Shown: piece after piece, positions 735 to 33,379 of the stretch
Layout of the letters: each line of letters opens with the position of its first letter
Numbering within the stretch: the stretch's first letter is position 1
Source of the DNA: Octopus bimaculoides
Taxonomy: Eukaryota
Direction of reading: 5' to 3'
DNA length: 33,653 bases
NCBI RefSeq assembly: GCF_001194135.2
Contig: NC_069002.1
Span: 22,844,148 to 22,877,800 of the forward strand
Notes under the pieces: model-generated
The model's input: the letters and a program-made list of their open reading frames with translations, nothing else
What the model was told of the DNA's origin: nothing
The model's database searches: none
Translations under genes and position numbers: made by a program

Positions 735-2285
735 TCACTTGGCTTGTCGGTTCTTCTCAAGCACAGCATATCTCCAGAGGTCCCGGTGCCTAGTCATTGC
801 CTTGGTAAGGCCCAATGTTTGAAAGTCATGCTTCACCACCTCATCCCAGGTTTTCCTGGGTCTACCTCTTCCACAGGTTCCCTCAACTTCTAGGGTGTGA
901 CATGTTTTCACACATCTGTCCTCATTCATTCGCAACATATGATCAATACCAGTGCAGTCGTCTCTCTTGCACACCACATCTGATGCTTCTTAAATCCAAC
1001 TTTTCTCTCAGGGTGCTTAGACTCTGTCATGTATTCACACTGACATCCGGTGGAGCATACTGGCTTCATTCTTTGCAAGCTTACGCATGTCCTCAGCAGT
1101 CACAGCCCATGTTTCTCTGCCATGTAACATGGCTGTTCGCACACATGCGTCATACAGACCTTTTGTCACTAGCAGAGGTAGGAGCTCTCTGAACTTTGCC
1201 CAGGCTATTCTTATTCTAGCAGCTACACTTTCAGAGCATTTACCCCTGCTAGTGACTTGGTCCCCTAGGTAACGGAAGCTATTAACTACTTCTAGTTTTT
1301 CTCCCTGGATTGTGATAGAAGTTGTTCTCTGTACATTTTCAGTGTTTATAGCATCTGAGCATTTGCCACATACAAAATCTATCTTCCCAGTTAGCCTCCC
1401 TTTGATATTGCTGCACCTCTTATGTGTCCATAGCTTACGCTGGGTACATCTTATGGAGTTTCTACCTATGCCTTTTCTACAGATCGAGCAGGACCATCTA
1501 CCTGAATGGATGTGTGGTTTGTCTGCCTTCCTACTTATTAAGACTTTGGTTTTAGCTAGGTTGACTCTAAGGCCCTTCGATTCTAGTCCTTGCTTCCACA
1601 CCTGAAACTTCTCCTCTAGTTCTGATAGTGACTCAGCAATTAGAGCAAGGTCATCATTATAGAGGAGCTCCAAGAGGCATCTTGTCTTGAATTCCTGTGT
1701 TATTGCCTGGAAGACTATGATGAATAAGAGGGGCTGAGGACTGATCCTTGGTGGACCCCTACCCCTACTCGGAATTCTTCATTGTACTCATTGCCACCCC
1801 TCACCCTATGACAGCATCCCTGTACATGGCTCGCACAGCTCGCACTAACCATTCATCTATCCCTAGTTTCCTCATTGACCACCAGATAAGGGATTGGGGG
1901 ACCCTGTCAAAGTCTTTCTCTGTGTCAACGAAAGGCAGGTACAGAGGTTTATCTTTGGCTAGGTATTTCTCCTGCAACTGCCTTACCAGAAATATAGCAT
2001 CAGTGGTGCTTTTCCCTGACACGAATCCAAACTGCATCTCATCTAGACTGACTCACTCCCTAATTAGTTGGGCTATGACCCTCTCCGTGACCTTCATTAC
2101 TTGATCCCACAACTTGATACCTCTGTAATTATTTGTATCTAGTGCGTCACCTTTGCGTTTGTAGCAGTTGACTATGGTCCTTCTACACCAGTCATTGGGT
2201 AATTACTCCTTCATAACTATACAGATGACTAGGCTATAGCCGACACCACTAGATATTTTGAGCCTCTCTGTGGTCATTTCCCTGC
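735..2285 (-). pseudogene. reverse transcriptase pseudogene (RTE ORF2 fragment)
   Basis: RT motifs are spread over several frames with stops; the catalytic YADD reads YNDD. Confidence 0.9.
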
Positions 2286-3879: not shown

Positions 3880-4330
3880 GTCTACTCCTTATGCAGAGTT
3901 TGACCACCTCCTGTACCTACACCTTAGATCCATCATGGCATCTAATGTGTCTTTTAAAACCAGACAATGTTCTGAAAAGACACCCACATAGATTGCATAT
4001 CCAGTTTGGACCACTATGAGCTGCAGCTAAGTTCTGATCTCTGTGAATCTTAAAATGTCTTTTGAGGCTTCCGTTAGATTTGCAAACCTTCTGGCATACA
4101 TTGCATTGAAAGGTATACACAGACATAGAGGCAGAATAGTTGGGGCAGGTTCGTTTTCCATGGGTTTGCAAATGAGATTCCAGCCCAGCAAAAGAGAGGC
4201 ATCGTCTGTCACAAACTGTGCACACAAAAAGGTCATTGTGATTCACCTTCTTGATCATAACATTCTTCCTTAAATCTCTTTTGAGTCTTGTATGCGTTAT
4301 CATGGCCTCTTCAAATGCTTTCACTCCATA
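3880..4330 (-). mobile_element. 3' end of a non-LTR retrotransposon ORF with three C2H2 zinc fingers
   Basis: ORF 3917-4357 has GVKAFEEAMITHTRLKRDLRK followed by CTVC..HLQTH, CNVC..HFKIH and CNLC..HIRCH. The first segment resembles the RTE-type C-terminus (G..FE..R...KR..RK then CxxC..S..GL.SH). It has no TGEKP linkers, is flanked by TA microsatellites, and its Met lies in the microsatellite. Confidence 0.65.
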
Positions 4331-4800
4331 TATATGTATATGTGTGTATATATGCACACATATTCACATGTAAGTTCCAGTTCTTGTGTGCTGTATTATA
4401 TATGAATCTTATATTAATTAATATCAACCCATCAAAAACACCAATATTTTAATTAATCTTTCCACTACTGTAAATGGTTCATTTATATCTGCCATGAATG
4501 TGGCCAGTTAATTGTATACTTTCACTGGAAAAAGAAGACCTGGGTATGTCTACCCTGAAGAATGGTCAACAAACCATGAAATGAGTCCCTTGAGAGTCTC
4601 CACTCAGCCTTTTTTTTTTTTTTTGCTATACATCAAAAATACAGTCTGAATGTGTTTATAAAAAAAGTTCACACAGTTAAATAGCTTTCAAATATTTACA
4701 TTTATTTCAATTCTTTTGATCTATGCTATCACACACACACAAGCACACACTTGTATGCATATGTGTGTGTTTACACACACACACACACACACACGTGCGT

Positions 4801-5254: not shown

Positions 5255-5559
5255 TATAAATATTTTATAATTATATACATAATTATAACAAGGGCTTGGT
5301 TTATGCCTCACCACGCACTGAAAAATAGACGTCAAAAGACACTATTACCACCATAAATTCCCCGAGCAAAACACACCACATAATAGGCCATGAGAAGAAA
5401 GAAAATGAAAATGTTCATTTTATTTCTTCTCATGGTCTATTATGTGGTGTGTTTTTCTCGGAGAGTTTATGGTGGTAATAGTGTCTTTTGACGTCTATTT
5501 TTCAGTGCGTGGTGAGGCATAAACCAAGCACTTGTTATAATTATGTATATAATTACAAA

Positions 5560-5568
<9 letters not shown>
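5255..5568. repeat. near-perfect palindrome, 155-bp arms and 4-nt loop (fold-back element)
   Basis: 5255-5409 is the reverse complement of 5414-5568 with no indels and only scattered mismatches; loop aatg at 5410-5413; (TA)n lies on both sides. Confidence 0.95.
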
Positions 5569-5599: not shown

Positions 5600-8463
5600 T
5601 AGCAGAGATACCTGGCATTGCTCAGGAGTGAAATGGCATATTTGTTTATTCTTATCTTTTACTTGTTGAAAATATTTGACTGTGGCGTTACTAGAGAATT
5701 GCCTTTAGTTGAACGAATTGACCCCAAGTACGCATTCTATCAGTCTGTTTTGTGAAGCTGGTAATTCATGGGGACATAAACATACCGACATTAGTTGGCA
5801 AGCAATGTATATTTATATATATATATATATATATCGATACACACACACACACACACAGATATATATGTATATCAATATAAATACATGAAAGTACATGAAG
5901 TTTGGGTAAAAAAAGGTGATTATGTACATACCTCCTGGCTGTTCTGATTATAACACCTTGTTGTAAACAATGTTCCTTGTTTTTCCTTGTGGAGCATATG
6001 TAAAGAGGTTTCTTTTGCTTGCCACTCTTGAGCAGCCAACATACAGTTGTCCATGTGAGGAGCAGGGCTCTTCCAAGAGATTTGTTAATGGACATAGCAA
6101 AACTGACATGATGGGGGAATTGCAGTTTTCTGAATGTAAATGGGATTTCTGCTCCTGATGGAGTAAGAGGAATTCTTGGAATAAAGACGTCCTCACCTTT
6201 TCCACATCCAAAAAGAATGATAGTCTCGATAACATGTGACATCATTTTCTTTATCACCAGTCGTGTTCCATTGCAAAGTCTTGGTGGTTCTAGATTGCAG
6301 AGTAGCGTAACAAGAGTTCCAACTTTAAGTGCTAACATGTGGAGATGTAGTCCAAGAGGCTCCAACGAATTGAGAAATTCAGGTGGATAGTTCACCACTT
6401 CATTTTAATCTGGAATTGTATCAACAGACTTGTAAGTGTGAAGAGTGCCAGGAAGAGAATGCATTAGCTGTTGATTAATTTTTTTAATAGCAGCATTTTT
6501 TTGAGCTAATATTGCTCTTTCACACAGCCAATTGTGATTTTGGTAGTTTTCTGTGAAGCTGGGAAAGACTTTGTGTTTGAGGTAATCTACAGAATTAACA
6601 ACGGCGGAAAATGGTCACATTTCCATTTCTCCTGCAGCGTTGAGAGGCACCTTGCCATCACCAAGTGTCAAAATGTCCTGTGCAAACTTTGTGGATATTT
6701 GGTCACCGTGTAGCTGAGCTCTCATGTTAGTGGTAAGACTGAAGATTGTAACATGATGCAACAGCGTAGAGGACTTTAGGCATGCTTGGACCTCATCTGC
6801 TCTAGTGCCTTTCGGAATGACAGGAAGAGTTTGCCTGAAATTACCTGACAGCAGAAGCGTTACACCTCCCATTGAAGCCTGACAGTCTCGGATGTCTTTC
6901 AGGGCTCTATGTAATGCTTCCAAAGCTCTCTTGTGAGCCATGGTGCACTCATCCCAGATAATTAGATGACACCTTTTAAGTACCTGCCCTGAACTGAGCT
7001 TTTGTTGATGTTGCATGAAGGTATCTCGGATGTTGCTAAATTGAGAGGGAGTTTAAAAGTGGAGTGTGCTGTCCTGCCACCGGGTAACAAAGTAGCTGCA
7101 ATCCCAGAGGAGGCTACAGCTACTGCAATGTCCTGATGCTGCCTAACTTCTGCAAGGAGAAGCTTTGTAAGAAATGTTTTTCCTGTTTCTTCCAGGAGCA
7201 TCGAGGAAGAAGATTCGTCCCTCGTGTTGGCGTACACTGTTAAGAATAGTTGTGTAGGCCTGCAGTTGGTCTGGAAGTAATTCAGGCTGATTTTCAAGAA
7301 TGTGCTTTGAAAACGCTTGAGTGTCGTAGGATGTTTCACGAACGACAACAGTAGGAAGGCTGTTTGACCCTGACCTGAATGTTTGCGGCAGGCCATACGT
7401 GGGCAATTCCTTTCCACCCAGGGTAGCAATTCTGTTTTCAATGTCAATGAGAGTTTTGTTATAGACTTCATTGCTGATACCCTCCATGTCAGAATAGAGC
7501 CGTTGAGCTTGCCGCTTAAAGTCTTCAGCCAGGTTGTCCCTGTACTTGAGCCATAGAGTTGCAGGATCACACAGTTCGCATGTCTGTAGTAATACTGCAA
7601 ACAGTGCCCTGAGACTTTTAGGTGATTCTGATAAAGCAGCCTCTCCCAAAGTTTCATCCCATTGTGCACCATCTTCGAACAGACCTTGTCGATAGCAGGC
7701 TTCTCTGTATGTTGTACAGACATGTCCTTGAATGGTTTTAGGACCTGGAAACACGTTGGCCCTCTGACCTCATGCAGTAGTAGACAGAGGTAGAAGCACT
7801 CTTGTTGAGTGGGATGTACTGTGTATACTCGCCCAAGGCAAATGTCAAACTTAATACCAGGGTATCCATGAGCATTTTGACCTACTTTCCATGGGGTGCA
7901 TTTTTTTTCATTCCAAGTGTAGTGCGATGGAATCTGGATACAGCAAGGTTTGAGCGAGTGGATCCACTTGACAAAACTTGAAGAATGCAGTGAGTGTGGT
8001 ATCCCTTGCTTCCTCTGCCAACAGAGAAGCGTTTGCATAAGTGAAGTACACTCTTTGACCGTTTTCCAGGTGCACTGCAAGCTGTTGAATGGCAGGGTGT
8101 TGTTGGTGAAGTGGTTATTAGTAGGAGTGGTAGAGTGTTTATGACTAATATGCATGTATGCATGTATATATGTGAGGTAATAGTTTCACTATAATAGTAT
8201 TAAACTGAAAGTATCTCACATTGCAATGGAGAGATAGTATTGTTTCACATTTGACACGTAATACTGAAATAGTGTAAGAGATAAGAGATTACTGTGGTCT
8301 TGCATTAAGCAAGAAGTTGAAAATTTTTTGGCCCATGACGTTGCACGGACCTTAAGTAAGGCATGTGTAAAATTTGAATGAAATCGGTTGGGTAATTGTC
8401 GAGTTTTAGGGATTCACACAGACGGACGGACAGACACACATTCTCATCTTGACGTATATGAGA
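5599..8463 (-). mobile_element. internally deleted Helitron with both termini and a PIF1-family helicase remnant
   Basis: The 3' end is a cctg-agcaatgc-cagg hairpin followed by CTAG|T (5599-5602) inserted in (TA)n; the 5' end is A|TC at 8464/8463. Helicase motifs: GKTF..ASSGIAATLLPGGRTAHSTFKLP, LIIWDECTM, GGVTLLLSGNFRQTLPVIP, LCNGTRL, IPRIPL, QFP..SFAMSINKS. Upstream there is QLAVHLENGQRVYFT..TTLTAFF. Confidence 0.9.
5766..8155 (-). pseudogene. Helitron RepHel C-terminal (SF1B/PIF1 helicase) pseudogene
   Basis: ORF fragments 6962-8155, 7143-7754, 6615-7016, 5766-6398 and 5948-6235 tile the helicase across several frameshifts. No Rep HUH motifs were seen. Confidence 0.9.
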
Positions 8464-9291: not shown

Positions 9292-9554
9292 AAGCAGCAG
9301 GTTGCAATGTTTCACCAAAAATAAGAATTATTATTGTCCCTAAATGTGACCAGGGTGTTAAAAATACCTACATTGCTAAAAATAAGAGCTAAAATGCTCT
9401 AATGCTATAGTTAATGTACATGAATGAAAACATATACATTAATAGGGACCATTATTGTCTGAAAAATTCTGACCGAGAATTCTTAAGACTGACATCAGTT
9501 TCAGCAATTTCCATTGCCTCATCAGTTAAGCCTGCTCGGTGTTTGGCTCTTAAT

Positions 9555-9798
9555 ACCTGTTTTCCATCCCAGCATGGGTTGGATGGTTTGACTTGAGCTG
9601 GTCAGTCAAAAGACTGCACCAGGCTCCAGGTGTCTGTCCTGGCATGGTTTCTATGGCTGGATGCTCTTCCTAAAACTAACCCCTCTACAGAGTGAGTTGG
9701 GTGCCTTTTACCTGGTGCTAGAATGAGTGCTTCTTCAGACGGTGCTAGCACAAATGGTGCTGGCATGGGTGCCTTTTGCATTATGCTGACACTGTGCA

Positions 9799-12734: not shown

Positions 12735-12950
12735 GGTAAGCTGGCGGAATCATTGGCATGCTTTGCAATATTTTGCCCATCTTTATGTTCTGATTTCAAA
12801 TTCTGCTGGGGTCAGTTTTGCCTTTCATCCTTTCATGGGGATGATGAAATAAACAGTAGGGTCAAAACAACCAACTTGCCCCCTCCTACAAAATTTCAAG
12901 CCTTGTGCCTCCAGTAGAAAGGATTATCATTATTATCATTATCATTGTTA

Positions 12951-12982
<32 letters not shown>
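12735..12982 (+). mobile_element. tRNA-like SINE with (ATT)n tail
   Basis: ggtaagctggcggaatc..gttctgatttcaaattctgctggggtc..gcctttcatcctttc..ccttgtgcctccagtagaaaggattatc followed by (ATT)n; several homologues occur in the window. Confidence 0.8.
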
Positions 12983-12984
<2 letters not shown>

Positions 12985-14326
12985 AATTAAAAGAAGAGTG
13001 CCATTTGTTATCTGGTGAACGATATTTCGACATCTCGTGTGTCTTCAACTGGTTCAAAAAATAAATTTGTCAATCTACTTTATTTTGGTTAATATAGAAA
13101 GGATTTGAACCAGTTGACGACACACGAGATGTCGAAATATCNNNNNNNNNNNNNNNNNNNNNNNNNNNNNNNNNNNNNNNNNNNNNNNNNNNNNNNNNNN
13201 NNNNNNNNNNNNNNNNNNNNNNNNNNNNNNNNNNNNNNNNNNNNNNNNNNNNNNNNNNNNNNNNNNNNNNNNNNNNNNNNNNNNNNNNNNNNNNNNNNNN
13301 NNNNNNNNNNNNNNNNNNNNNNNNNNNNNNNNNNNNNNNNNNNNNNNNNNNNNNNNNNNNNNNNNNNNNNNNNNNNNNNNNNNNNNNNNNNNNNNNNNNN
13401 NNNNNNNNNNNNNNNNNNNNNNNNNNNNNNNNNNNNNNNNNNNNNNNNNNNNNNNNNNNNNNNNNNNNNNNNNNNNNNNNNNNNNNNNNNNNNNNNNNNN
13501 NNNNNNNNNNNNNNNNNNNNNNNNNNNNNNNNNNNNNNNNNNNNNNNNNNNNNNNNNNNNNNNNNNNNNNNNNNNNNNNNNNNNNNNNNNNNNNNNNNNN
13601 NNNNNNNNNNNNNNNNNNNNNNNNNNNNNNNNNNNNNNNNNNNNNNNNNNNNNNNNNNNNNNNNNNNNNNNNNNNNNNNNNNNNNNNNNNNNNNNNNNNN
13701 NNNNNNNNNNNNNNNNNNNNNNNNNNNNNNNNNNNNNNNNNNNNNNNNNNNNNNNNNNNNNNNNNNNNNNNNNNNNNNNNNNNNNNNNNNNNNNNNNNNN
13801 NNNNNNNNNNNNNNNNNNNNNNNNNNNNNNNNNNNNNNNNNNNNNNNNNNNNNNNNNNNNNNNNNNNNNNNNNNNNNNNNNNNNNNNNNNNNNNNNNNNN
13901 NNNNNNNNNNNNNNNNNNNNNNNNNNNNNNNNNNNNNNNNNNNNNNNNNNNNNNNNNNNNNNNNNNNNNNNNNNNNNNNNNNNNNNNNNNNNNNNNNNNN
14001 NNNNNNNNNNNNNNNNNNNNNNNNNNNNNNNNNNNNNNNNNNNNNNNNNNNNNNNNNNNNNNNNNNNNNNNNNNNNNNNNNNNNNNNNNNNNNNNNNNTC
14101 ACCAGATAACAAATGGCACTCTTCTTTTAATTTTGACTCTATATCTTCAGGAGGAGTTACCTCAACCCTTTCTATATTAACCAAAATGAAGTAGATTGAC
14201 AAATTTATTTTTTGAACCAGTTGAAGACACACGAGATGTCGAAATATCGTTCACCAGATAACAAATGGCACTCTTCTTTTAATTTTGACTCTATATCTTC
14301 AGGAGGAGTTACCTCAATCCTTTCTA

Positions 14327-14594: not shown

Positions 14595-15024
14595 GACTAG
14601 CAGAAATGTTAGCAAACTGGACAAAATGCTTAGCAGCATTTCTTACGTTCTGAGTTCAAATTCTGCTGAGGTCGACTTTGCTTTTCTTCCTTTCGGGGTT
14701 GATAAAATAAATACCAGATATGCACTGTGGTTGATGCAATTGACTAGATCTCCCCCCACATATAAATTTTATTATCATCATTATTGCGATTAGTAGTAAT
14801 AATGATAATAATGGTTTTAAATTATGGGACAAGTCCAGCAATTTTGAGGGAGGGGACCAGTCGGTTAGATCGACTCCAGTACATAACTGGTACTTATTTA
14901 ATCAACCCTGAAAGGATGAAAGGCAAAGTTGATCTTGGTGGAATTTGAACTCAGAACGTTAAGACGAACAAAATGCCGCTAAGCATTTTGCCTGGCGTAC
15001 TAATGATTCTGCCAGCTCGCCACC

Positions 15025-15027
<3 letters not shown>
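14358..15027. mobile_element. three further copies of the (ATT)n-tailed SINE (about 14358-14590 +, 14592-14800 +, 14810-15027 -)
   Basis: Shared core gttctgagttcaaattc..gaggtcgactttgc..tcctttcggggttgataaaataa and its reverse complement, separated by (ATT)n/(AAT)n tracts. Confidence 0.8.
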
Positions 15028-15094
<67 letters not shown>

Positions 15095-19579: not shown

Positions 19580-20060
19580 ACAAGTGAAATGGATAGAATG
19601 TGACCAGGAATCTACGTTTTGGTCTTGTGTTTGCATTGTGGGATGTTTTCAGTCTTCATAAGAAGCCTGTTGTATGAATGAGGCATTCTTGAAACTCCTT
19701 CTTCAAAATGCACCTTTTGGTTCTTTACAGAAGAATTCTTTCTCCACAAGAAGGTTCTGAAGAAGGCCAGCTATTTTGATTTTGTAACACTTGGTTGCCA
19801 AATGTTTTGAATTGTGTTACAGACATTCCAGGCTTGTCCCTTGCATGTAAGGGAGTTTTTCTTACTGTTAAACTGTCAGCAACATAGAATATGAGGTACT
19901 TAAGCTCATCACCGGATCAAACTGGCAGATGACTTCCGTCTTCATTGATGACCATGGATTCAGTTTTCGTTGCATTAAGAAACTGACTGATTTTAGCTGC
20001 AGCAGTCTCAAGTGATTTTAAAAAGTCTTGTACCACACAAATAAGGATCTGTGATCATCA
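19580..20060 (-). pseudogene. highly decayed LINE reverse transcriptase fragment (RTE/RTEX-like)
   Basis: The minus strand gives DD..VQDFLKSLETAAAKISQFLNATKTESMVIN..ELKYL..GQAWNVCNTIQNIWQ..FFRT.VE.IL, matching the post-YADD pattern (LE.AA...GL.LN..KTE.M; AW......IW). Confidence 0.55.
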
Positions 20061-20094
20061 AGATCATCATCATTGTTAAGACCTTGATCAGTAA

Positions 20095-20213
20095 TACAGT
20101 TCTATATTTAAGAAATGAGGAATTATGTACATTATTTACATTTGATGGATATTTGTCCTCATCAGCCTACGGGCTACTAACCCCAAGATTCCAAGTTCGA
20201 TTCCAGGCAGTGA

Positions 20214-20248
<35 letters not shown>

Positions 20249-20392
20249 TCGAAAAATACCTTAGGAATGAGAACCCAGGTTCAAAATTTCCCCAAGACAC
20301 CTGATAAACGCTGGAAGGTATATCAACCGAAATATTGTGTTATCAACAAACAAGATGAGGACAAATATCTGTTGAATGTAAAGAATGTACTG
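20095..20392 (+). mobile_element. internally deleted copy of the palindromic tRNA-head/hammerhead element, 9-bp TSD
   Basis: TSD gatcagtaa at 20086-20094 and 20393-20401. The inverted tail occupies 20095-20163, followed by a partial tRNA head with B-box GTTCGATTCC (20195-20204), (AAT)n and the tail. Confidence 0.88.
20296..20341 (+). ncRNA. degenerate (probably inactive) hammerhead ribozyme motif
   Basis: GACAC-CTGATAA-acgctggaaggtatatcaacc-GAAA-TATT-GTGTT; G8 changed to A, and helix II and the CG of helix III are mutated relative to 28090-28135. Confidence 0.7.
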
Positions 20393-20407
20393 GATCAGTA
20401 AATCATT

Positions 20408-20615
20408 TCTGTTATGGGTACAAGGCCAGAGGTTTTGGGGAAGGGCTGAGTTGATTGCAACAACTCCAGTGTTCAACTGGTCCTTTATTTCATCAACCCT
20501 GAAATGATGAAAGGCAAAGTGAACCTCAGCAGAATTTGAACCCAGAACATAAAGACAGATGAAATACTGCTAAGCATTTTGTCCAGTGCATTAACGGTTC
20601 TGCCAACTCACTGCT
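20408..20615 (-). mobile_element. (ATT)n-family tRNA-like SINE
   Basis: caaccctgaaatgatgaaaggcaaagtgaacctcagcagaatttgaacccagaac..ctaagcattttgtcc matches 14810-15027. Confidence 0.8.
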
Positions 20616-20749
20616 TTGCCTTGACTGGTAATACTAGCATCAGTTCTAACACAAGTTATAAGTTTGAAGGTTTAAGAAGGCATAGATTCAATGCAATCGG
20701 TTCCAGTGCTTTGCTGTCATTATATTGAAGGATGAGATGCTCATTTGCA

Positions 20750-23271: not shown

Positions 23272-24545
23272 ATATCAAAAACTTCCAGGACTAGTTCTGT
23301 AGCATGCCAATAGATGGCGACACACAGTTGCACGTGCAGTGATAGCTGCATGTGCAGTGACCCTCATGAGACAGTTGTGAAATTTGTGTCTTTGTGATCA
23401 TGTGTATGCTGTAGTCTGCGATTTTGTCATGGATAGGAACAAAGAGCCAATGTGAAATCTTGTATTAAACTTGGGAAGTCTGCTGCAAAGATATTGAGCA
23501 TGCTTTGGCAAACTTATGGCTTTGAGCCAATGGGTTGTATGCAATGTTTCCAATGACATGGGTGCTTCAAAACTGGAAAAACATCCCTGGAAGACAATGA
23601 GCAATCTAGAAGTCCTGCCATGAGCGTCACCCCCAGAAATGTGGAGAAAATTCATCAGGTTGTGCCTGAAGATTGTTGGAAGACAATCAATAGCATTTTG
23701 AAGCTTTTCTGGGAGGACATTCAGTAAAAGTGACCATATCTGTGGAGCATGAAGAATTGGATTCTTCACAATAACAATATACCCTATCACCAAGCTCTCT
23801 TCATCTGTGAGTTTCTCACCAAAAACAACATGGTACCACTTCTGCACCCACCCTATTCACCAGATTTAGCACCTGTGGACTTGTATCTCTTTCTCAAGAT
23901 GAAGATGCAGCCCAGAGGTTGCCATTTTAATGCCATTGTTGAGATCCAGAGCAAATTACATAAGATCCTCGATTTACTTATGGAAAACAACTTCCAAGCC
24001 AGACTCCAGAAGTGGCAGGAATCCTGGGACCAGTGTGTTGTTGTACAAAGGGACTATTTCGAAGGAGATGATTATTTACTTAAGTTAGAACTTAGGTAAA
24101 TAAGTAATTTTTTATTAAACATAACTAGTCTTTTACTTGTTTTAGTCATTTGACTGTGGCCATGCTGGAGCACCGCCTTTAGTCGAGCAAATTGACCCCA
24201 GAGCTTATTCTTTGTAATCCTAGTACTTATTCTGTTGGTCTCTTTTGCCGAACTGCTAAGTTACGGGGACGAAAACACACCAACATCGGTTGTCAAGCGA
24301 TGTTGGGGGACAGATACAGACACACAAATATATACACACATATACATATATATATACATATATGACGGGCTTCTTCCAGTTTCCGTCTACCAAATTCTCA
24401 AATCCACTCACAAGGCTTTGGTTGGCCCAAGGCTATAGGTGAAGACACTTGCCCAAAGTGTCATGCAGTGTGACTGGAGCTGGGACCATGTGGTTGGTAA
24501 GTGAGCTTCTTACCACACAGCTACTCCTGCGCCTTTTTTGATACT
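23272..24545 (+). mobile_element. internally deleted mariner; right TIR split by a SINE
   Basis: ORF 23749-24099 has WILHNNN..HPPYSPDLAPVDLYLF..WQESWDQCV....DYFEGD. The N-terminal HTH remnant lies at about 23430-23690. Left TIR atatcaaaaacttccaggactagtt; right TIR halves aactagtc (24123-24130) and ttttttgata (about 24534-24543) flank the SINE. Confidence 0.85.
24131..24533 (-). mobile_element. full-length tRNA-derived SINE with central microsatellite
   Basis: The minus strand starts ggcgcaggagtagctgtgtggtaagaagc (A-box-like), followed by gggcaagtgtcttcacctatagccttgggccaaccaaagccttgtgagtggatt, a (TA/CA)n tract and a tail ending gccacagtcaaatgactaaaac. Confidence 0.85.
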
Positions 24546-25029
24546 ACCCCAAAAAAAAAAAAAACTCAATGAATTTTGGTAATTAAATATCATTAGGAAT
24601 TGTAGAAAAAGATTGTTAAAATATTTGATGACTTGTAGAAATATATGCAATTTATGGCACATGAATTTTAACCACAAAATCTTATATGGACCCCAAAAGG
24701 GTCATGTGGACCCTGCTTGAGAACCAATGGTTTTGAGAGAAAGAAGAGGTGAGAGGGGACAGAGAAGAAGAAGACACTGAGAAGAGAAGAGAAAGTGCAA
24801 AAGGGGAAGAGACAGAAGAGAGAGAGAGAGAGAGGGGGAGGAGAGAGAAAGAAGAATTGAGAGTTGTGCTGGGCTGGTGCTATATTTGTTGCCTCCGAAA
24901 GAATGAAAGAGGGAGTTGACTTTGATAGATTTTGAAATCAGAGTGCATAAGGATGGAGTAAATACTACAAGGCACTGTGACTGATTTTCTAATCACTCTG
25001 CCAATTCACATATCATCTTTTACTTAGAC

Positions 25030-25150
25030 ATATGTGTGTATGTGTACATATGAATATCTATGTGTGTGTGTATTTATATATATATACACATACACACACA
25101 TGTGTATGTGTGTATATATGTGTACATATGTATATATATATGTATATATA

Positions 25151-25201
<51 letters not shown>

Positions 25202-25216
25202 ACACACATACATATA
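25030..25216. repeat. compound TG/TA/CA microsatellite
   Basis: Direct reading. Confidence 0.9.
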
Positions 25217-25722
25217 TTTCATTTCATTTGACCAGAAACATGCCCTCTAAAACTACAGCCAAGTCCTTGTTCTATTGTAAAATGTGACTCTGTGAATACT
25301 TTTTACATTTTCCCTCTCTTGTCACCATGTGCTCTTAAAGATCCTTCCTGTTGCATAAATGTTTGTCCGATAAATATGCTGACTGAGAATGTCTCGTGTA
25401 TAATCTCTTCTATGTCATGACACCTGTGCCTGTCCCTCAATCATACTTTAGCCTTTCAACATCTGACATAAAGCCACTTCCACTTTCTCCTCCGAAATAT
25501 TTCCTCTTAGTAATGAGAACTTTTACCCTTTATTTTTCCTCTGTTCATTTATGTCCTGCAAGTTGACATGGCAACCCCACTAGTGCTGGTGGTATGTAAA
25601 AAGTATCCAGTACATTCTATAAAGTGGTTGGCATTAGGAAGGACATTCAGCAGTAGAAACCATGCCAAAGATGAGATTGGAGCCTGACACAGCCTTGCAG
25701 CTCAATGGTTCTCTGTCAAACT

Positions 25723-26064
25723 ATCCACAGATATGGTCACTTTTGCTGAATGTCCTGCCTCAAACTGTCCAAAACATCATTGATTGTCTTCCAACAACCC
25801 TCATGCACAACCTGATGAATTTTCTCCATGTTTCTGCTGGTGATGCTCATGGAAGATCTTCCAGATTGCTCATTGTCTTCCAGATTGCTCATTGTCTTCC
25901 AGATTGCTCATTGTCTTCCAGATTGCTCATTGTCTTCCAGATNNNNNNNNNNTCTTCCACTTTTGAAGCACCGCCACCACTCAAAAGATTGCATACAACC
26001 CATTGCCTCAGAGCCAGAAGCTTGCCAAAGCATGCTCAATATCTTTGTAGCAAACTTCCCAAGT
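25723..26064 (-). mobile_element. TIR-less fragment of the same deleted mariner as 23272-24545
   Basis: Reverse complement of about 23470-23747 (aaacttgggaag..gatattgagcatgctttggcaa..gagaaaattcatcaggttgtg..ggacattcag.aaaagtgaccatatctgtgga). Confidence 0.85.
25857..25959. repeat. 19-bp perfect tandem repeat (tcttccagattgctcattg), at least 4.5 copies, next to a 10-N gap
   Basis: Units start at 25857, 25876, 25895, 25914 and 25933; N at 25943-25952. Confidence 0.92.
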
Positions 26065-26126
26065 TTCCAGCATAGAAAGCAGACATGAAATGATGATGAT
26101 GATGGTGATATAGATATTTATATGAT

Positions 26127-27811: not shown

Positions 27812-28089
27812 TGTGTGTGTGTGTGTGTGTATACATGCACCAAGCTAAGTAAAATCATGGTTGTCCTTGCATATAGGCTTGTCCTCTGCATCCCTCTCCA
27901 GCTGAGCATTCCTAATCTTGTGGGCTTGTTGGTACTGGTGCCACATAAATGCACCCATGTTGGTGCTGCATAACGGTATCCAGCACACTCTGTAAAGTGG
28001 TTGGCATTAGGGAGGGCATCCAGCTGTAGAGACCAGGCCATAACATTATTTACATTTGACGGATATTTGTCCTCATCGTGTTTGTTGTT

Positions 28090-28135
28090 AACACAACGTT
28101 TCGGCTGATATACCCTCCAACCTTCATCAGGTGTC
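28090..28135 (-). ncRNA. minimal type I hammerhead ribozyme, core intact
   Basis: The minus strand reads GACAC CUGAUGA A GGUUG gaggguauau CAGCC GAAA CG UU GUGUU. Helix I is GACAC/GUGUU, helix II is GGUUG/CAGCC, helix III is the palindromic ACGU, and the cleavage triplet is GUU. This matches the minimal hammerheads described for Penelope-like elements. Activity is untested. Confidence 0.85.
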
Positions 28136-28193
28136 TTGGGGAAATTTTGAACCTGGGTTCTCATTCCTAAGATATTTTTCAATGTCATTATCA

Positions 28194-28246
<53 letters not shown>

Positions 28247-28290
28247 TTTCAGGTCACTGCCTGGAATCGAACTATACACCATATGTTCAT

Positions 28291-28365
28291 GGGCATATGG
28301 TGTAGTGGTTAAGAGCTCGGACTACTAACCCCAAGATTCCGAGTTTGATTCCAGGCAGTGACCTG
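28291..28365 (+). promoter_or_regulatory. tRNA-derived Pol III internal promoter (SINE head)
   Basis: A-box TGGTGTAGTGG (28298-28308) and B-box GTTTGATTCC (28343-28352). The AAGATTCC.AGTT.GATTCCAGGC segment resembles eukaryotic tRNA-Arg(ACG) from memory, but the loop reads CTACTAA and the acceptor stem does not pair. Confidence 0.75.
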
Positions 28366-28372
28366 AAAAATG

Positions 28373-28409
<37 letters not shown>

Positions 28410-28470
28410 TAAAAATAATGACATCGAAAAATACCTTAGGAACGAGAAACTAGGTTTGAAATTTCCCCAA

Positions 28471-28513
28471 GACACCTGATGAAGGCTGGAGGGTATATCA
28501 GCCGAAACGTGTT
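28471..28513 (+). ncRNA. hammerhead ribozyme motif with a 3-nt deletion at the cleavage site/helix I
   Basis: GACAC CTGATGA A GGCTG gagggtatat CAGCC GAAA CGT GTT; perfect core and helix II, but TGT is missing relative to the left arm. Confidence 0.78.
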
Positions 28514-28730
28514 AACAACAAACAAGATGAGGACAAATATCCGTCAAGTGTAAATAATGTAAATAATGTACATAATTCCTCATCTTTTAAATATAGAACT
28601 GTACTATGCCATAACAGTTAGAGCTTGGGCAGCTCTTCAGCTGGCCAGTTCCTGTTAAACTGTCTAACCCATACCAGCATGGGAAACGGACGTTAAATGA
28701 TGATGATGATGATGATATAATCATCGATGC

Positions 28731-28917
28731 TTAACCCTTTAGCATTCAAATTACTCCGTCAAATGTAATATTTATTCACATTGTTTCAAATTAATCACGT
28801 ATTGTCTCATAGCTTTGAGATTTCAGTGATGTTACTTTAGAATGACAGTGTAGGGTAGGTACAAAACAAGTGGGACATTTTGGCCTGGTCTGGCCAGTTT
28901 AAATGTTAAAGGGTTAA
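28731..28917. mobile_element. piggyBac-like MITE
   Basis: TTAA (28731-28734) followed by ccctttagcattcaaa, ending tttaaatgttaaaggg followed by TTAA (28914-28917). The 16-bp TIR has 2 mismatches; CCC termini and a TTAA TSD are piggyBac hallmarks. Confidence 0.82.
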
Positions 28918-31203: not shown

Positions 31204-31976
31204 AGATGGGGTGTGCAAGAGAGACAACTGCGCTGGTATGGTCTTGGGTTGTGTATGGATGAGGACAGCTGTGTGAAAAAGTGTCACATTCTAGCAGTAG
31301 AGGGAACCTGTGGAAGAGGTAGACCAGGAAGACCTGGGATGAGGTGGTGAAGCACGATCTTCAAACGTTGGGCCTCACTGAGGCGATGACAAGTGACCGA
31401 GACCTATGGAGGTATGCTGTGATTGAGAAGACCTGGCAAGCCAAGTGAGACCATAACCTGTGGCCTCTGCCAGTGCAGCATAACCGGCCCATTTAAGAGT
31501 ATCCTTCAATCATTGGGCAATAAACTGTGCTTGTGAGGACATGTTGAGGCAAGTCGTGGCTGATGACTGTACCACCTGATTGGCACCTGTGCCAGTGGCA
31601 TGTAAAAAGCACCATTTGAATGTGGCTGATGTCAGTGCCACCTGACTGGCTCTGTGCCGGTGGCACAGGAAAAGCACTATTCGAATATGGTTGTTACCAG
31701 TGCTACCTGACTGGCTCCCATGCTAGTGGCACATAAAAAGCACCATTCAAGTATGGTCGATGCCAGTGCTGGCTGACTGGCTCTTGTGCTGATGGCATAT
31801 GAAAATCACTCACGACACTCTTGGAGTGGTTGGTGTTAGGAAGGGCATCCAGCTGTAGAAACTTTGCCAGATCAGATTGGAGCCTGGTGCAGCCTTCAGG
31901 CTTGCCAGCCCTCACTCAAACTGTCCAACCCATGCCAGCATGGAAAGTGGACGTTAAACGATGATGATGATGATGA
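31204..31976 (+). mobile_element. 3' end of RTE-clade LINE with complete 3' UTR and (GAT)n tail
   Basis: Encodes RQLRWYG..MDEDSCVKKCHILAVEGTCGRGRP/KTWDEVVKHDLQTLGLTEAMTSDRDLWRYAVIEKTWQAK* (TGA at about 31446-31448), homologous to 735-977. The UTR ends ggacgttaaacgatgatgatg. Confidence 0.92.
31605..31810 (+). repeat. approx. 66-bp tandem units in the RTE 3' UTR
   Basis: aaaagcacc/tatt..ccagtgc..ctgactggctc..gtggcaca occurs three times. Confidence 0.8.
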
Positions 31977-32134
31977 CAGTGAGTTAAAACTTTCTTATCT
32001 CTGGGTTTGATAAAATAATTACACTCCTATGCCAGCTCTCCTACACTAATTCTGTGACCCCGCTACCCAAAATTTAGAAATATGTTATTATTATGATTTT
32101 ATTCTTATAATTTGATACATGCAGCAAAGATCTT

Positions 32135-32345
32135 GAAATGGAGATAACCAATCATTAGCATGCCAAACAAAATGCTTCACAGCATTTATTCTAGTTCTTT
32201 GTTTTGAGTTGAAATCGCCCTGAGGTCAACTTTGCTTCTCATCCTTTCAGAGTTGATAAAATAAAGTACCTGTCATGTGCTGGGGTCACTGTAATTGACT
32301 AGCTCCCCACACAAATTTCAGACCTTGTACCTTTATTAGAAACAC
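32135..32345 (+). mobile_element. (ATT)n-family tRNA-like SINE, decayed
   Basis: aaaatgcttcacagcattt..gaggtcaactttgcttctcatcctttcagagttgataaaataaagtacc..ctggggtc. Confidence 0.75.
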
Positions 32346-33204: not shown

Positions 33205-33379
33205 TAAGGTGGTGAGCTGGCAGAATTGTTAGCATGCTGGGCAAAATGCTTAGTGGTTATTTCATCCATCCTTATGTTCTGAGTTCAAATTCTGCTGAGG
33301 TTCATTTAGCACCCCCCCCAAAAAAAAAATTTCAGGCCCTGTGCCTATAGTAGAAAGGATTATTGTTATTATTATTATT
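33205..33379 (+). mobile_element. (ATT)n-family tRNA-like SINE with internal deletion
   Basis: aaggtggtgagctggcagaattgttagcatgctgggcaaaatgcttag..gttctgagttcaaattctgctgagg..ccctgtgcctatagtagaaaggattatt. Confidence 0.82.

What the first reader, a model, noticed from the sequence alone, without database searches (positions are those of the whole stretch)
20086..20401. Second independent insertion shows the same 34-nt terminal asymmetry and a 9-bp TSD
Seen: TSD gatcagtaa. One end carries the full terminus (20095-20128, reverse complement of acataattcctcatttcttaaatatagaactgta, 34 nt). The other arm stops at about aaagaatgt(ac). In the 28-kb copy the full 34-nt extension is at 28570-28603 and the other arm again stops at aaataatgt, overlapping the TSD by aca. 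Two separate insertions therefore share a long arm and a short arm that differ by the same 34 nt, but have different internal breakpoints. From recollection, Drosophila virilis Penelope has a short terminal tail of similar size. Inference: the asymmetry is a mechanistic footprint of priming or fold-back second-strand synthesis, not random decay.
Basis: partly seen in the sequence, partly recalled or inferred. Interest (0 to 1): 0.7.

Follow-up and report, generated by a model that had tools for sequence, protein, structure and literature searches.

The report
Octopus SINE with Penelope-type ends
Two insertions in this octopus window, and a third in other octopus DNA, carry head-to-head inverted arms, a one-sided 34-nt tail, a 9-bp target duplication and a minimal hammerhead ribozyme, which together are the known insertion signature of Penelope-like retrotransposons, seen here on a small SINE-like passenger I found no description of.

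Summary
Both loci are head-to-head inverted dimers of one ~315-nt non-coding unit. The unit has a pol III A/B-box head, an internal (TAA)n, a body and a 3' tail. Each dimer is flanked by an exact 9-bp TSD. For copy 2 a paralogue of the interrupted host repeat serves as an empty site. In each dimer one arm ends at ...AGAACTGTA and the other stops 34 nt earlier, at ...AATAATGT(AC). In ~220 kb of O. bimaculoides and O. sinensis DNA I found a third dimer with the same two end points, plus one solo 5'-truncated tailed copy. The unit body holds a minimal type-I hammerhead motif with the four hallmarks described for Penelope-like elements (PLEs). Published work describes this exact architecture for PLEs: an inverted 5'-truncated copy, a 30-40-bp tail at one end, and 8-10-bp TSDs. 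It assigns the tail to reverse transcription starting at two adjacent internal template sites, with both target strands cleaved and extended. The asymmetry is therefore a genuine mechanistic footprint, but a known one. The likely new part is the carrier, a pol III-headed, hammerhead-bearing SINE-like element that probably parasitises octopus PLEs. No autonomous partner was identified. Three dimers cannot show that the one-tail rule is obligate.

The parts
20086..20094 (.). Copy 1, left copy of the 9-bp target-site duplication GATCAGTAA
   Evidence: identical to 20393-20401. Its last 5 nt (AGTAA) could also pair with UUACU just beyond the tail, giving possible microhomology.
20095..20163 (-). 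Copy 1, antisense arm of 69 nt. It comprises the 34-nt tail (20095-20128) plus the stem-loop region up to GATGAGGA (20156-20163).
   Evidence: The arm begins exactly at the base of the predicted stem.
20164..20390 (+). Copy 1, sense arm. It is 5'-truncated inside the tRNA-like head and lacks the A box. It contains a B box (20195-20204), (TAA)9 (20220-20246) and a decayed hammerhead (20296-20341, core CTGATAA). It ends ...AATGTAC without the tail.
20391..20392 (.). Copy 1, two filler nucleotides (TG) between the short-arm end and the TSD
20393..20401 (.). Copy 1, right copy of the TSD GATCAGTAA
28037..28045 (.). Copy 2, left copy of the TSD GCCATAACA. ACA (28043-28045) overlaps the arm end.
   Evidence: Paralogues of the host repeat carry this stretch once.
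28046..28289 (-). Copy 2, antisense arm. It is full length apart from a 36-nt deletion in the head and has no tail. It contains an intact minimal hammerhead (28090-28135), (TTA)n (~28196-28250) and a B box (28263-28272).
28290..28603 (+). Copy 2, sense arm, full length. It contains A and B boxes (28298-28352), (TAA)n (~28374-28420), a hammerhead remnant with a 3-nt deletion (28471-28513), stem strands at 28526-28533 and 28577-28584, and the 34-nt tail (28570-28603).
   Evidence: The palindrome centre CA|TG lies at 28289/28290, 8 nt upstream of the A box, where a pol III transcript would start.
28604..28607 (.). Copy 2, four extra nucleotides (CTAT) between the tail and the TSD. CTAT also follows the tail in the L003 copy, so it may be templated.
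28608..28616 (.). Copy 2, right copy of the TSD GCCATAACA

Best explanation
The repeated unit is a ~315-nt non-autonomous retroelement of Octopus. It consists of:
- a tRNA-like head with pol III A and B boxes;
- an internal (TAA)n;
- a body carrying a Penelope-type minimal hammerhead ribozyme;
- a stem-loop;
- a 3' tail.

It is most likely copied into the genome by the reverse transcriptase/GIY-YIG endonuclease of a Penelope-like element (PLE). That dependence is inferred, not shown.

Proposed integration. The endonuclease makes nicks staggered by 9 bp, which accounts for the TSD. Both 3' ends prime cDNA synthesis on element RNA. Each cDNA therefore runs from the outside inwards, which gives two arms with their tails outwards and their heads together. 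Reverse transcription can start at either of two fixed internal template sites:
- a proximal site, at the centre of ATGT|ACAT in the loop;
- a distal site, at ...AGAACUGUA(UUACU), 34 to about 43 nt further 3'.
An arm primed distally carries the tail, and an arm primed proximally lacks it. The two cDNAs stop at arbitrary points or at the RNA 5' end. They are joined at their 3' ends through short palindromes or microhomology. This explains why the inner breakpoints differ between copies while the outer ends do not.

Shown here: the architecture, the end points, the TSDs, the empty site and the hammerhead motif. Taken from published biochemistry on an anole PLE: two-site internal initiation and extension of both strands. 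Inferred: that this mechanism applies to the octopus element.
For: Architecture:
- The inverted arms are highly significant.
- The 9/9 TSDs enclose the whole dimer in copies 1 and 2.
- Copy 2 has a paralogous empty site.
- A third dimer, L003 14718-14890 in O. bimaculoides, has a 22-nt tail-less antisense arm starting at the same ACATTATTTAC and a 150-nt tailed sense arm.
- L011 holds a solo 5'-truncated tailed copy, typical of retroposition.

End points:
- The three tail-less ends lie at AATAATGT, AATAATGT(A) and AATGTAC.
- The four tailed ends all lie at ...AACTGTA or its variant ...AACTACA.
- Junctions carry filler (TG, CTAT) or microhomology (ACA, AGTAA), as in reverse-transcription-based integration.

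PLE link:
- My hammerhead descriptor hits 28090-28135(-). Shuffled windows gave 0.06 loci on average, and 0 of 200 had two or more loci.
- The motif has no helix III loop, a palindromic ACGU at 15.1-16.1, an extra nucleotide between A9 and G10.1, a G10.1-C11.1 pair and a 5-bp helix I. These are the features listed for PLE min-HHRs in PMC4209133.
- The defects in the other arms are private mutations, so the consensus is intact.

Literature match:
- PMC8557442 describes the inverted 5'-truncated copy and a 30-40-bp tail often at one end.
- PMC3846280 describes A. vaga Pen2a with an inverted pLTR, a 31-bp tail, a 9-bp TSD and palindromes at inverted junctions.
- PMC11167929 shows that both strands are cleaved and extended, that RT starts at two internal sites in a stem-loop, and that the tail is the sequence between them.

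Other support:
- The proximal site lies inside a predicted 8-10-bp stem-loop whose 3' strand is in the tail.
- The A+B box pattern is found once, in the head, against 0.004 expected per shuffled window.
- PLEs are abundant and recently active in octopus genomes (PMC13282606; PMC8967140).
Against: - No PLE RT or GIY-YIG ORF lies in the window or the 12 fetched loci. No autonomous partner sharing the 3' module was identified.
- Rfam reports no hammerhead in the element even at E<=10. The motif rests on my own descriptor and on published criteria.
- Only one of four long arms has an intact core.
- The head is not recognised as a tRNA by ARAGORN at default settings or by Rfam.
- The stem-loop is only modestly better than shuffles (z=-2.1 and -1.1).
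- Only three dimers were seen. If the two start sites were used independently on the two strands, three asymmetric dimers out of three has probability up to 0.125, so an obligate one-tail rule is not shown.
- The published biochemistry reports no homology between primer and start site, whereas two of the junctions here show 3-5 nt of possible microhomology.
Confidence: 0.78

Rival explanations
1. Same PLE machinery, different origin of the asymmetry. A single cDNA primed at the distal site folds back on itself, or a symmetric two-tailed intermediate forms. The GIY-YIG endonuclease then cuts one end at the palindrome ATGT|ACAT and removes one tail. This is the endonuclease-mediated resolution proposed in PMC8557442. 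It is a sub-variant of the best explanation, not an alternative identity.
For: - Copy 2 is a near-perfect palindrome through its centre CA|TG, as fold-back would give.
- Two of the three short ends lie exactly at the centre of the 8-bp palindrome ATGTACAT.
- The D. virilis endonuclease needs the tail sequence for cleavage (PMC11167929).
- All three dimers have exactly one tail.
Against: - Copies 1 and 3 have arms of 69 vs 227 nt and 22 vs about 150 nt. The sequences meeting at the inner junction are not complementary, so simple fold-back cannot have made them.
- In vitro RT start sites already account for the tail boundaries without a resolution step.
Confidence: 0.25
2. An ordinary LINE-dependent SINE whose inverted copies arose by twin priming, as in L1 inversions.
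For: - Octopus genomes are rich in LINEs and SINEs.
- A LINE RT fragment lies in the window.
- Twin priming also gives TSD-flanked inversions with 5' truncation.
Against: - There is no poly(A) or microsatellite 3' tail. The unit ends in unique sequence.
- In twin priming the inverted segment comes from upstream of the sense segment. Here both arms start at or near the 3' end and overlap.
- In copy 1 it is the inverted arm, not the sense arm, that carries the true 3' terminus.
- Fixed two-site ends and a PLE-type hammerhead are not LINE features.
Confidence: 0.07
3. A MITE or Mutator-like DNA transposon with long terminal inverted repeats and a fixed 9-bp TSD. The extra 34 nt would be an asymmetric subterminal end.
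For: - 9-bp TSDs occur in two copies, and 8/9 in a third.
- Copy 2 looks like a 560-bp element with ~240-bp inverted repeats.
- Mutator families exist in O. vulgaris.
Against: - The termini are not symmetric.
- The ends are imprecise, with filler TG and CTAT and a variable distal end.
- Arm lengths differ wildly between copies.
- A solo 5'-truncated sense copy exists.
- The unit starts with a pol III promoter at the palindrome centre and carries a hammerhead.
- The arms of copy 2 are no closer to each other than to copy 1, a star-like pattern fitting copies of one master RNA.
Confidence: 0.04
4. Chance adjacency of independent insertions followed by decay, or post-insertion palindrome formation or an assembly artefact.
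For: - The window has assembly gaps.
- The region is repeat-dense.
Against: - A single TSD encloses each dimer, and the empty site has been reconstructed.
- The same end points recur in a different chromosome-level assembly.
- No N runs lie within or next to either copy.
Confidence: 0.02

Closest known systems
Penelope-like element insertion structure (pLTR, inverted 5'-truncated copy and 'tail'), e.g. Adineta vaga Pen2a, D. virilis Penelope, Anolis PAc, Naiad
   Same: - Head-to-head inverted arms.
- A 30-40-bp extension on one end only.
- A 9-bp TSD (Pen2a: 31-bp tail, 9-bp TSD).
- A palindrome at the inverted junction.
- A hammerhead motif upstream of the end region.
- RT start region in a stem-loop.
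Sources.
   Different: - No RT/GIY-YIG ORF. The unit is only ~315 nt.
- The unit starts with a pol III-type A/B-box head and holds an internal (TAA)n.
- No direct pLTR tandem was seen.
Metazoan non-LTR retrozymes (Cervera & de la Pena 2020; Li, Clavereau & Pollet 2026 preprint)
   Same: - Short (170-400 nt), AT-rich and non-coding.
- Type-I hammerhead.
- Proposed to be non-autonomous derivatives of PLE pLTRs.
- TSDs longer than 4 bp.
Sources.
   Different: - Retrozymes are tandem arrays expressed as circular RNAs and have canonical hammerheads in invertebrates.
- This element is dispersed, as single or inverted copies.
- It has the minimal PLE-type hammerhead.
- It has a pol III head.
Schistosoma Sm-alpha / Sj-alpha SINE-like retroposons
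   Same: [quoted passage not shown]
   Different: - Sm-alpha has a canonical, active hammerhead.
- It is often found in tandem.
- The texts I read report no inverted-arm or tail signature for it.
L1 twin priming
   Same: A TSD-flanked insertion containing an inverted segment, produced by priming from both target nicks (established knowledge of L1).
   Different: - L1 priming of the second strand is at variable internal positions.
- The inverted segment lies upstream of the sense segment.
- Here both primers use one of two fixed sites near the 3' end.

Membership tests
PLE-type insertion (Penelope-like element or its non-autonomous derivative) | Adjacent inverted 5'-truncated copy forming head-to-head repeats inside one TSD | tested here: met
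   Copies 1 and 2 and L003 meet this. One further copy (L011) is a solo truncated insertion.
PLE-type insertion (Penelope-like element or its non-autonomous derivative) | Optional 30-40-bp tail present at only one end | tested here: met
   A 34-nt tail (up to about 43 nt) sits on exactly one arm in 3 of 3 dimers. The tail-less ends lie within 2-3 nt of each other.
PLE-type insertion (Penelope-like element or its non-autonomous derivative) | Short TSD of variable length (8-10 bp reported) | tested here: met
   9/9 in copy 1, 9/9 in copy 2 with a paralogous empty site, and 8/9 in TA-rich sequence in L003.
PLE-type insertion (Penelope-like element or its non-autonomous derivative) | Hammerhead ribozyme motif of the PLE minimal type in the repeated module | tested here: met
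   The descriptor hits 28090-28135(-), against 0.06 loci per shuffled window. All four hallmarks of PMC4209133 are present and the consensus of four arms is intact. Caveat: Rfam gives no hit, and catalytic activity was not tested.
PLE-type insertion (Penelope-like element or its non-autonomous derivative) | RT related to telomerase plus GIY-YIG endonuclease, or sequence identity of the 3' module with an autonomous PLE | not testable with these tools
   The element is non-coding. No PLE ORF was found in the window or in 12 octopus loci. No tool searches an octopus genome or Repbase by DNA.
SINE (pol III-transcribed, tRNA-derived) | Internal pol III promoter (A and B boxes at tRNA-like spacing) at the 5' end | tested here: met
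   The pattern TRGYNNANNGG-N25-45-GTTYGANNCC matches once, at 28298-28352, against 0.004 expected per shuffled window. The B box GTTCGANNCC occurs only in this element. The A box starts 9 nt from the arm start.
SINE (pol III-transcribed, tRNA-derived) | Head recognisably derived from a tRNA | tested here: inconclusive
   ARAGORN finds a cloverleaf only at -ps70. There is no Rfam tRNA hit at E<=10.
SINE (pol III-transcribed, tRNA-derived) | 3' end shared with a partner LINE, or an A-rich or microsatellite tail | tested here: not met
   The unit ends in the unique sequence ...TAAATATAGAACTGTA. The (TAA)n is internal.
MITE / Mutator-like DNA transposon | Symmetric terminal inverted repeats with precise ends | tested here: not met
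   One end is 34 nt or more longer than the other. Filler nucleotides and variable distal ends are present.
Metazoan non-LTR retrozyme | Tandem head-to-tail repeats each with a type-I hammerhead | tested here: not met
   No tandem direct copies were found in the window or the loci.

The most novel reading that the evidence does not exclude
This may be a documented case of a pol III-transcribed SINE that parasitises Penelope-like elements. Its insertions may also obey a strict rule of one tailed end and one tail-less end. Such a rule would mean that the two subunits of a dimeric PLE ribonucleoprotein prime the two target strands from two different fixed template positions in a coordinated way, rather than choosing start sites independently. 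Because the element is short, both ends and the inner junction of every event are fully assembled. An octopus genome would then hold many complete natural integration products to test this.
Probability: 0.2. Interest if true: 0.7.

Novelty: new member of a known kind. Interest (0 to 1): 0.42.

Why it matters
How PLEs integrate has been a long-standing puzzle: why they form inverted repeats, and why one end carries a tail. In vitro data became available only in 2024. Full-length PLE insertions are long and often mis-assembled.

A short non-autonomous passenger carrying the same signature gives complete, easily aligned insertion events. Start-site usage, junction microhomology, TSD length and target preference can all be counted on them genome-wide.

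The finding also indicates that at least one family among the many unclassified octopus SINEs (893 recently active unclassified SINE families were reported for O. vulgaris) may depend on PLEs rather than LINEs. That would change how octopus repeats are classified. The asymmetry itself is not new.

Tried and rejected
- Exact-pattern scans for the element core found nothing: two scans of metagenome contigs and one of viral contigs.
- A search with the element's spurious sense ORF found a single O. bimaculoides UniRef protein. It includes the tail in frame but has no DNA on record.
- The Rfam gathering scan and two E<=10 scans over the element gave no hammerhead or tRNA hit. ARAGORN found nothing at default settings.
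- The supplement of the O. vulgaris repeat paper holds no consensus library.
- Literature searches found no description of a tRNA-headed, PLE-dependent SINE. Repbase and Dfam could not be queried.
- What worked: the window's Helitron PIF1 ORF retrieved annotated O. bimaculoides and O. sinensis proteins. Their 20-kb chromosomal neighbourhoods could be fetched as 12 loci, about 220 kb of non-N sequence. BLAST and nhmmer over them gave one more dimer, one solo copy and one diverged relative.
- All 12 look-ups are used, so I left the third protein search unused. Any PLE protein it found could not have been placed on DNA.
- I considered reading the C-G to U-A change at hammerhead positions 15.2/16.2 in copy 1 as covariation. 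I rejected this because it is equally explained by CpG decay on both strands.
- I considered the (G/C)ACC motif beside the TSD as a target signal. With n=3 it is only noted in passing.

Full report
**What is at the coordinates.** The window is AT-rich, repeat-dense eukaryotic DNA with five N gaps. Reading 19900-20600 and 27900-28800 and aligning the pieces shows two insertions of the same ~315-nt unit. Each insertion is a head-to-head inverted dimer.

Copy 1 reads, in order:
- TSD GATCAGTAA (20086-20094);
- a 227-nt sense arm (20164-20390), 5'-truncated inside the head and ending ...AAAGAATGTAC;
- two filler nucleotides, TG;
- the TSD again (20393-20401).

Copy 2 reads, in order:
- TSD GCCATAACA (28037-28045);
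- an antisense arm (28046-28289) ending outwards at ...AAATAATGT, whose ACA overlaps the TSD;
- a sense arm (28290-28603) ending with the 34-nt tail, which has 2 mismatches to copy 1;
- CTAT;
- the TSD again (28608-28616).

The 34-mer occurs only at these two places, with none in 100 shuffles. The 16-mer GATGAGGACAAATATC occurs only in the four arms. The inverted self-match of copy 2 has E=5e-80.

**The TSDs are real.** Copy 2 sits inside another dispersed repeat that has several paralogues in the window (family D13). I joined the two flanks of copy 2 with a single TSD copy. The result aligns colinearly, with no gap at the junction, to the paralogue at 31760-32000. The whole dimer therefore went in as one event and duplicated 9 bp. 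Copy 1 lies in the degenerate ATC/ATT-rich tail of an abundant octopus SINE. There the empty site cannot be reconstructed as cleanly, but the 9/9 repeat is exact.

**Organism and further copies.** A search with the unit's longest sense ORF found one protein, an uncharacterised O. bimaculoides entry that reads through the tail in frame. No DNA was on record for it.
- Pattern scans of metagenome and viral collections found nothing.
- A search with the window's Helitron-type PIF1 ORF returned annotated O. bimaculoides and O. sinensis proteins on chromosome-scale records.
- I fetched twelve 20-kb neighbourhoods around them.
- BLAST and an nhmmer profile of the arms found three more elements in about 220 kb of non-N sequence.

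The three elements are:
- **L003 14718-14890 (O. bimaculoides): a third dimer.** The flank ...CCCTGTATATAT is followed by a 22-nt antisense arm, ACATTATTTACATTTACATTTG, which has no tail. Next comes a ~150-nt 5'-truncated sense arm that runs through the hammerhead region to ...CATAATTCCTCATCTCTCAAATATAGAACTGTA. After that come TTACTCTA and TGTATACAT, which matches the left flank at 8 of 9 positions.
- **L011 16125-16197 (O. sinensis):** a solo 5'-truncated sense copy with the tail and no inverted arm.
- **L009 20286-20400:** a diverged relative.

**End points (seven-arm alignment).**
- The three tail-less arms end at AATAATGT (copy 2), AATAATGT or AATAATGTA (L003) and AATGTAC (copy 1).
- The four tailed arms all reach ...AGAACTGTA, or its variant ...AACTACA in L011.
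- Beyond that point copy 1 and L003 share TTACT, and copy 2 and L003 share CTAT. The distal end is therefore fuzzy by 0-9 nt, and the tail is 34 to about 43 nt long.
- If short-arm ends were random truncation points on a ~300-nt unit, three ends within 3-4 nt would have a probability of about 1e-4 (my estimate).
- These ends abut TSDs, so they date from the insertion itself and are not later decay.
- The inner junctions all differ: unit position ~238 joined to ~30 in copy 1, the two 5' ends joined at CA|TG in copy 2, and a 22-nt arm joined to unit position ~155 in L003.

**What the unit is.**
- *Head.* The composite A-box/B-box pattern at tRNA-like spacing matches once in the window, at 28298-28352, against 0.004 matches per shuffled window. 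The B box GTTCGANNCC occurs only in this element. The A box starts 9 nt from the arm start, which is also the palindrome centre of copy 2. Both arms of copy 2 therefore look like full-length copies of a pol III transcript. A tRNA cloverleaf is not convincingly detectable.
- *Body.* My type-I hammerhead descriptor found GACAC-CTGATGA-A-GGTTGG...CAGCC-GAA-ACGT-T-GTGTT at 28090-28135(-). A window-sized shuffle gives 0.06 loci, and none of 200 shuffles gave two. The motif has no helix III loop, a palindromic ACGU, an extra nucleotide between A9 and G10.1, a G10.1-C11.1 pair and a 5-bp helix I. These are the features reported for the minimal hammerheads of PLE pseudo-LTRs (PMC4209133). The other three long arms each carry a different private defect: G8A, a 3-nt deletion and G12A. 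The consensus is therefore intact. Rfam does not report the motif, and activity is untested.
- *3' region.* An 8-10-bp stem (GATGAGGA/TCCTCATC) encloses the proximal end site, and its 3' strand lies in the tail. The predicted stability is only modestly above shuffles. The short arm of copy 1 begins exactly at the base of this stem.

**Comparison with the literature.**
- Craig et al. 2021 (PMC8557442) describe PLE insertions as 5'-truncated, often with an adjacent inverted 5'-truncated copy. They note a 30-40-bp tail that is often present at only one end.
- Arkhipova et al. 2013 (PMC3846280) describe A. vaga Pen2a with an inverted pLTR, a 31-bp tail on one of the inverted pLTRs, a 9-bp TSD, and palindromes at inverted junctions.
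- Frangieh et al. 2024 (PMC11167929) show that a purified anole PLE protein cleaves and extends both target strands. It starts reverse transcription at two adjacent internal sites in a stem-loop, and the genomic tail is the sequence between those sites.
- PLEs are abundant and recently active in octopus (PMC13282606; PMC8967140).
- Non-autonomous derivatives of PLE pLTRs are known as non-LTR retrozymes (PMC7229834; 2026 preprint). Pol III-promoted hammerhead SINE-like elements are known in schistosomes (PMC6765202).

**Mechanism.**
- Priming from both nicks of a 9-bp staggered cut gives the observed topology: an antisense arm on the left and a sense arm on the right, with 3' ends outwards and heads inwards, inside one TSD.
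- Choice between a proximal and a distal start site gives tail-less and tailed arms.
- Variable cDNA length, with joining of the two cDNA 3' ends through short palindromes or microhomology, gives the variable inner junctions.
- Simple fold-back fits the symmetric copy 2 but not copies 1 and L003.
- A variant in which the endonuclease trims one tail at the palindrome ATGT|ACAT cannot be excluded.
- All three dimers have exactly one tail. Under independent start-site choice this has probability up to 0.125, so an obligate rule is not demonstrated.

**Rivals.**
- A Mutator-like MITE is suggested by the 9-bp TSD and the long inverted repeats. It fails on asymmetric and imprecise ends, on the solo 5'-truncated copy, and on the pol III head at the palindrome centre.
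- L1-style twin priming fails because both arms start near the 3' end and overlap, and because there is no A-rich tail.
- Chance adjacency fails on the single enclosing TSD and the empty site.
- Substitution counts on 186 ungapped columns are 11, 8 and 4 private changes for the three long arms. The pattern is star-like, as expected for copies of one master made at about the same time.

**Limits.** No autonomous partner was found. Repbase and Dfam could not be searched. Only four insertion events were available. Hammerhead activity and pol III transcription are inferred from sequence alone.

**Verdict.** The asymmetry is the already described PLE tail signature. The element carrying it appears to be an undescribed octopus member of the class of PLE-dependent non-autonomous retroelements.

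Noticed in passing
window 9482-9530 (-): A textbook-looking type-I hammerhead: CTTAA-CTGATGA-GGCAAT GGAA ATTGCT-GAA-ACTG ATGT CAGT-C|TTAAG. It lies just 3' of a copy of the dispersed repeat that also hosts copy 2 (9560-9700, minus strand). Rfam Hammerhead_3 scores 19.2 bits (E=0.23), below the gathering score.
   Followed up: partly
window 28545-28575, 20129-20144; L003 14867-14890; L011 16139-16165: The proximal end site sits in a short array of 9-mers, TGTAAATAA/TGTACATAA, whose unit number varies between arms. There is an extra unit in copy 2's tailed arm and in L011, and a 6-nt duplication in the L003 short arm. The site also lies at the centre of the palindrome ATGT|ACAT.
   Followed up: partly
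window 20078-20085, 28029-28036; L003 ~14891-14900 (-): The three dimer insertions share (G/C)ACC 2-3 nt upstream of the left TSD boundary: AAGACCTT|, GAGACCAG| and CGCACCC|. This may be an endonuclease target preference, but n=3, and in copy 1 it is not consistent relative to the tailed side.
   Followed up: no
window 20267-20401 (+), 28194 downwards (-); protein P0001: The sense frame MRTQVQNFPKTPDEGW... stays open for more than 50 codons through the hammerhead, stem-loop and tail in most arms. The distance from its ATG to the proximal end site is 123 nt, against 111-118 nt from ORF start to RT start in the anole PLE. It may be a relic of a PLE ORF N-terminus.
   Followed up: no
L009 20286-20400 (O. 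sinensis): A diverged relative of the unit. It has the core CTGAAGA-A-...GAAAC and the end ...AAATATATCACTGTATACT but lacks the stem-loop segment. This supports TGTAT(T)ACT as part of the ancestral 3' end.
   Followed up: partly
window 5255-5568: A near-perfect palindrome with 155-nt arms, 95% complementary and 4 nt apart. It lies next to (TA)n and just downstream of the Helitron-like ORFs. Its nature is unknown.
   Followed up: no
window 5766-8155 (-): Frameshifted PIF1-like helicase ORFs (Pfam PF05970, PF21530), i.e. a decayed Helitron-type element. Paralogues at 87-93% DNA identity occur in O. bimaculoides.
   Followed up: partly
window 1035-1673 (-); 3917-4357 (-); 23467-26066: Three other repeat-related features: a LINE reverse-transcriptase fragment with a PHD/CCHC-like stretch; a C2H2 zinc-finger ORF; and a DDE_3 (Tc1/mariner-type) fragment at 23749-24099 lying between long inverted repeats at 23467-23746 and 25724-26066.
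   Followed up: no
window 12740-12990, 14600-15030, 20402-20620, 32180-32270, 33258-33310: Many copies of the abundant octopus SINE (...GTTCTGAGTTCAAATTCTGCTGAGGTCGACTTTGC...) with ATT/ATC-type microsatellite tails. Copy 1 of the studied element is inserted in the degenerate tail of one of them.
   Followed up: no
window 31587-31782: Three tandem 65-nt units (77-80% identity) immediately upstream of a copy of the host repeat family.
   Followed up: no
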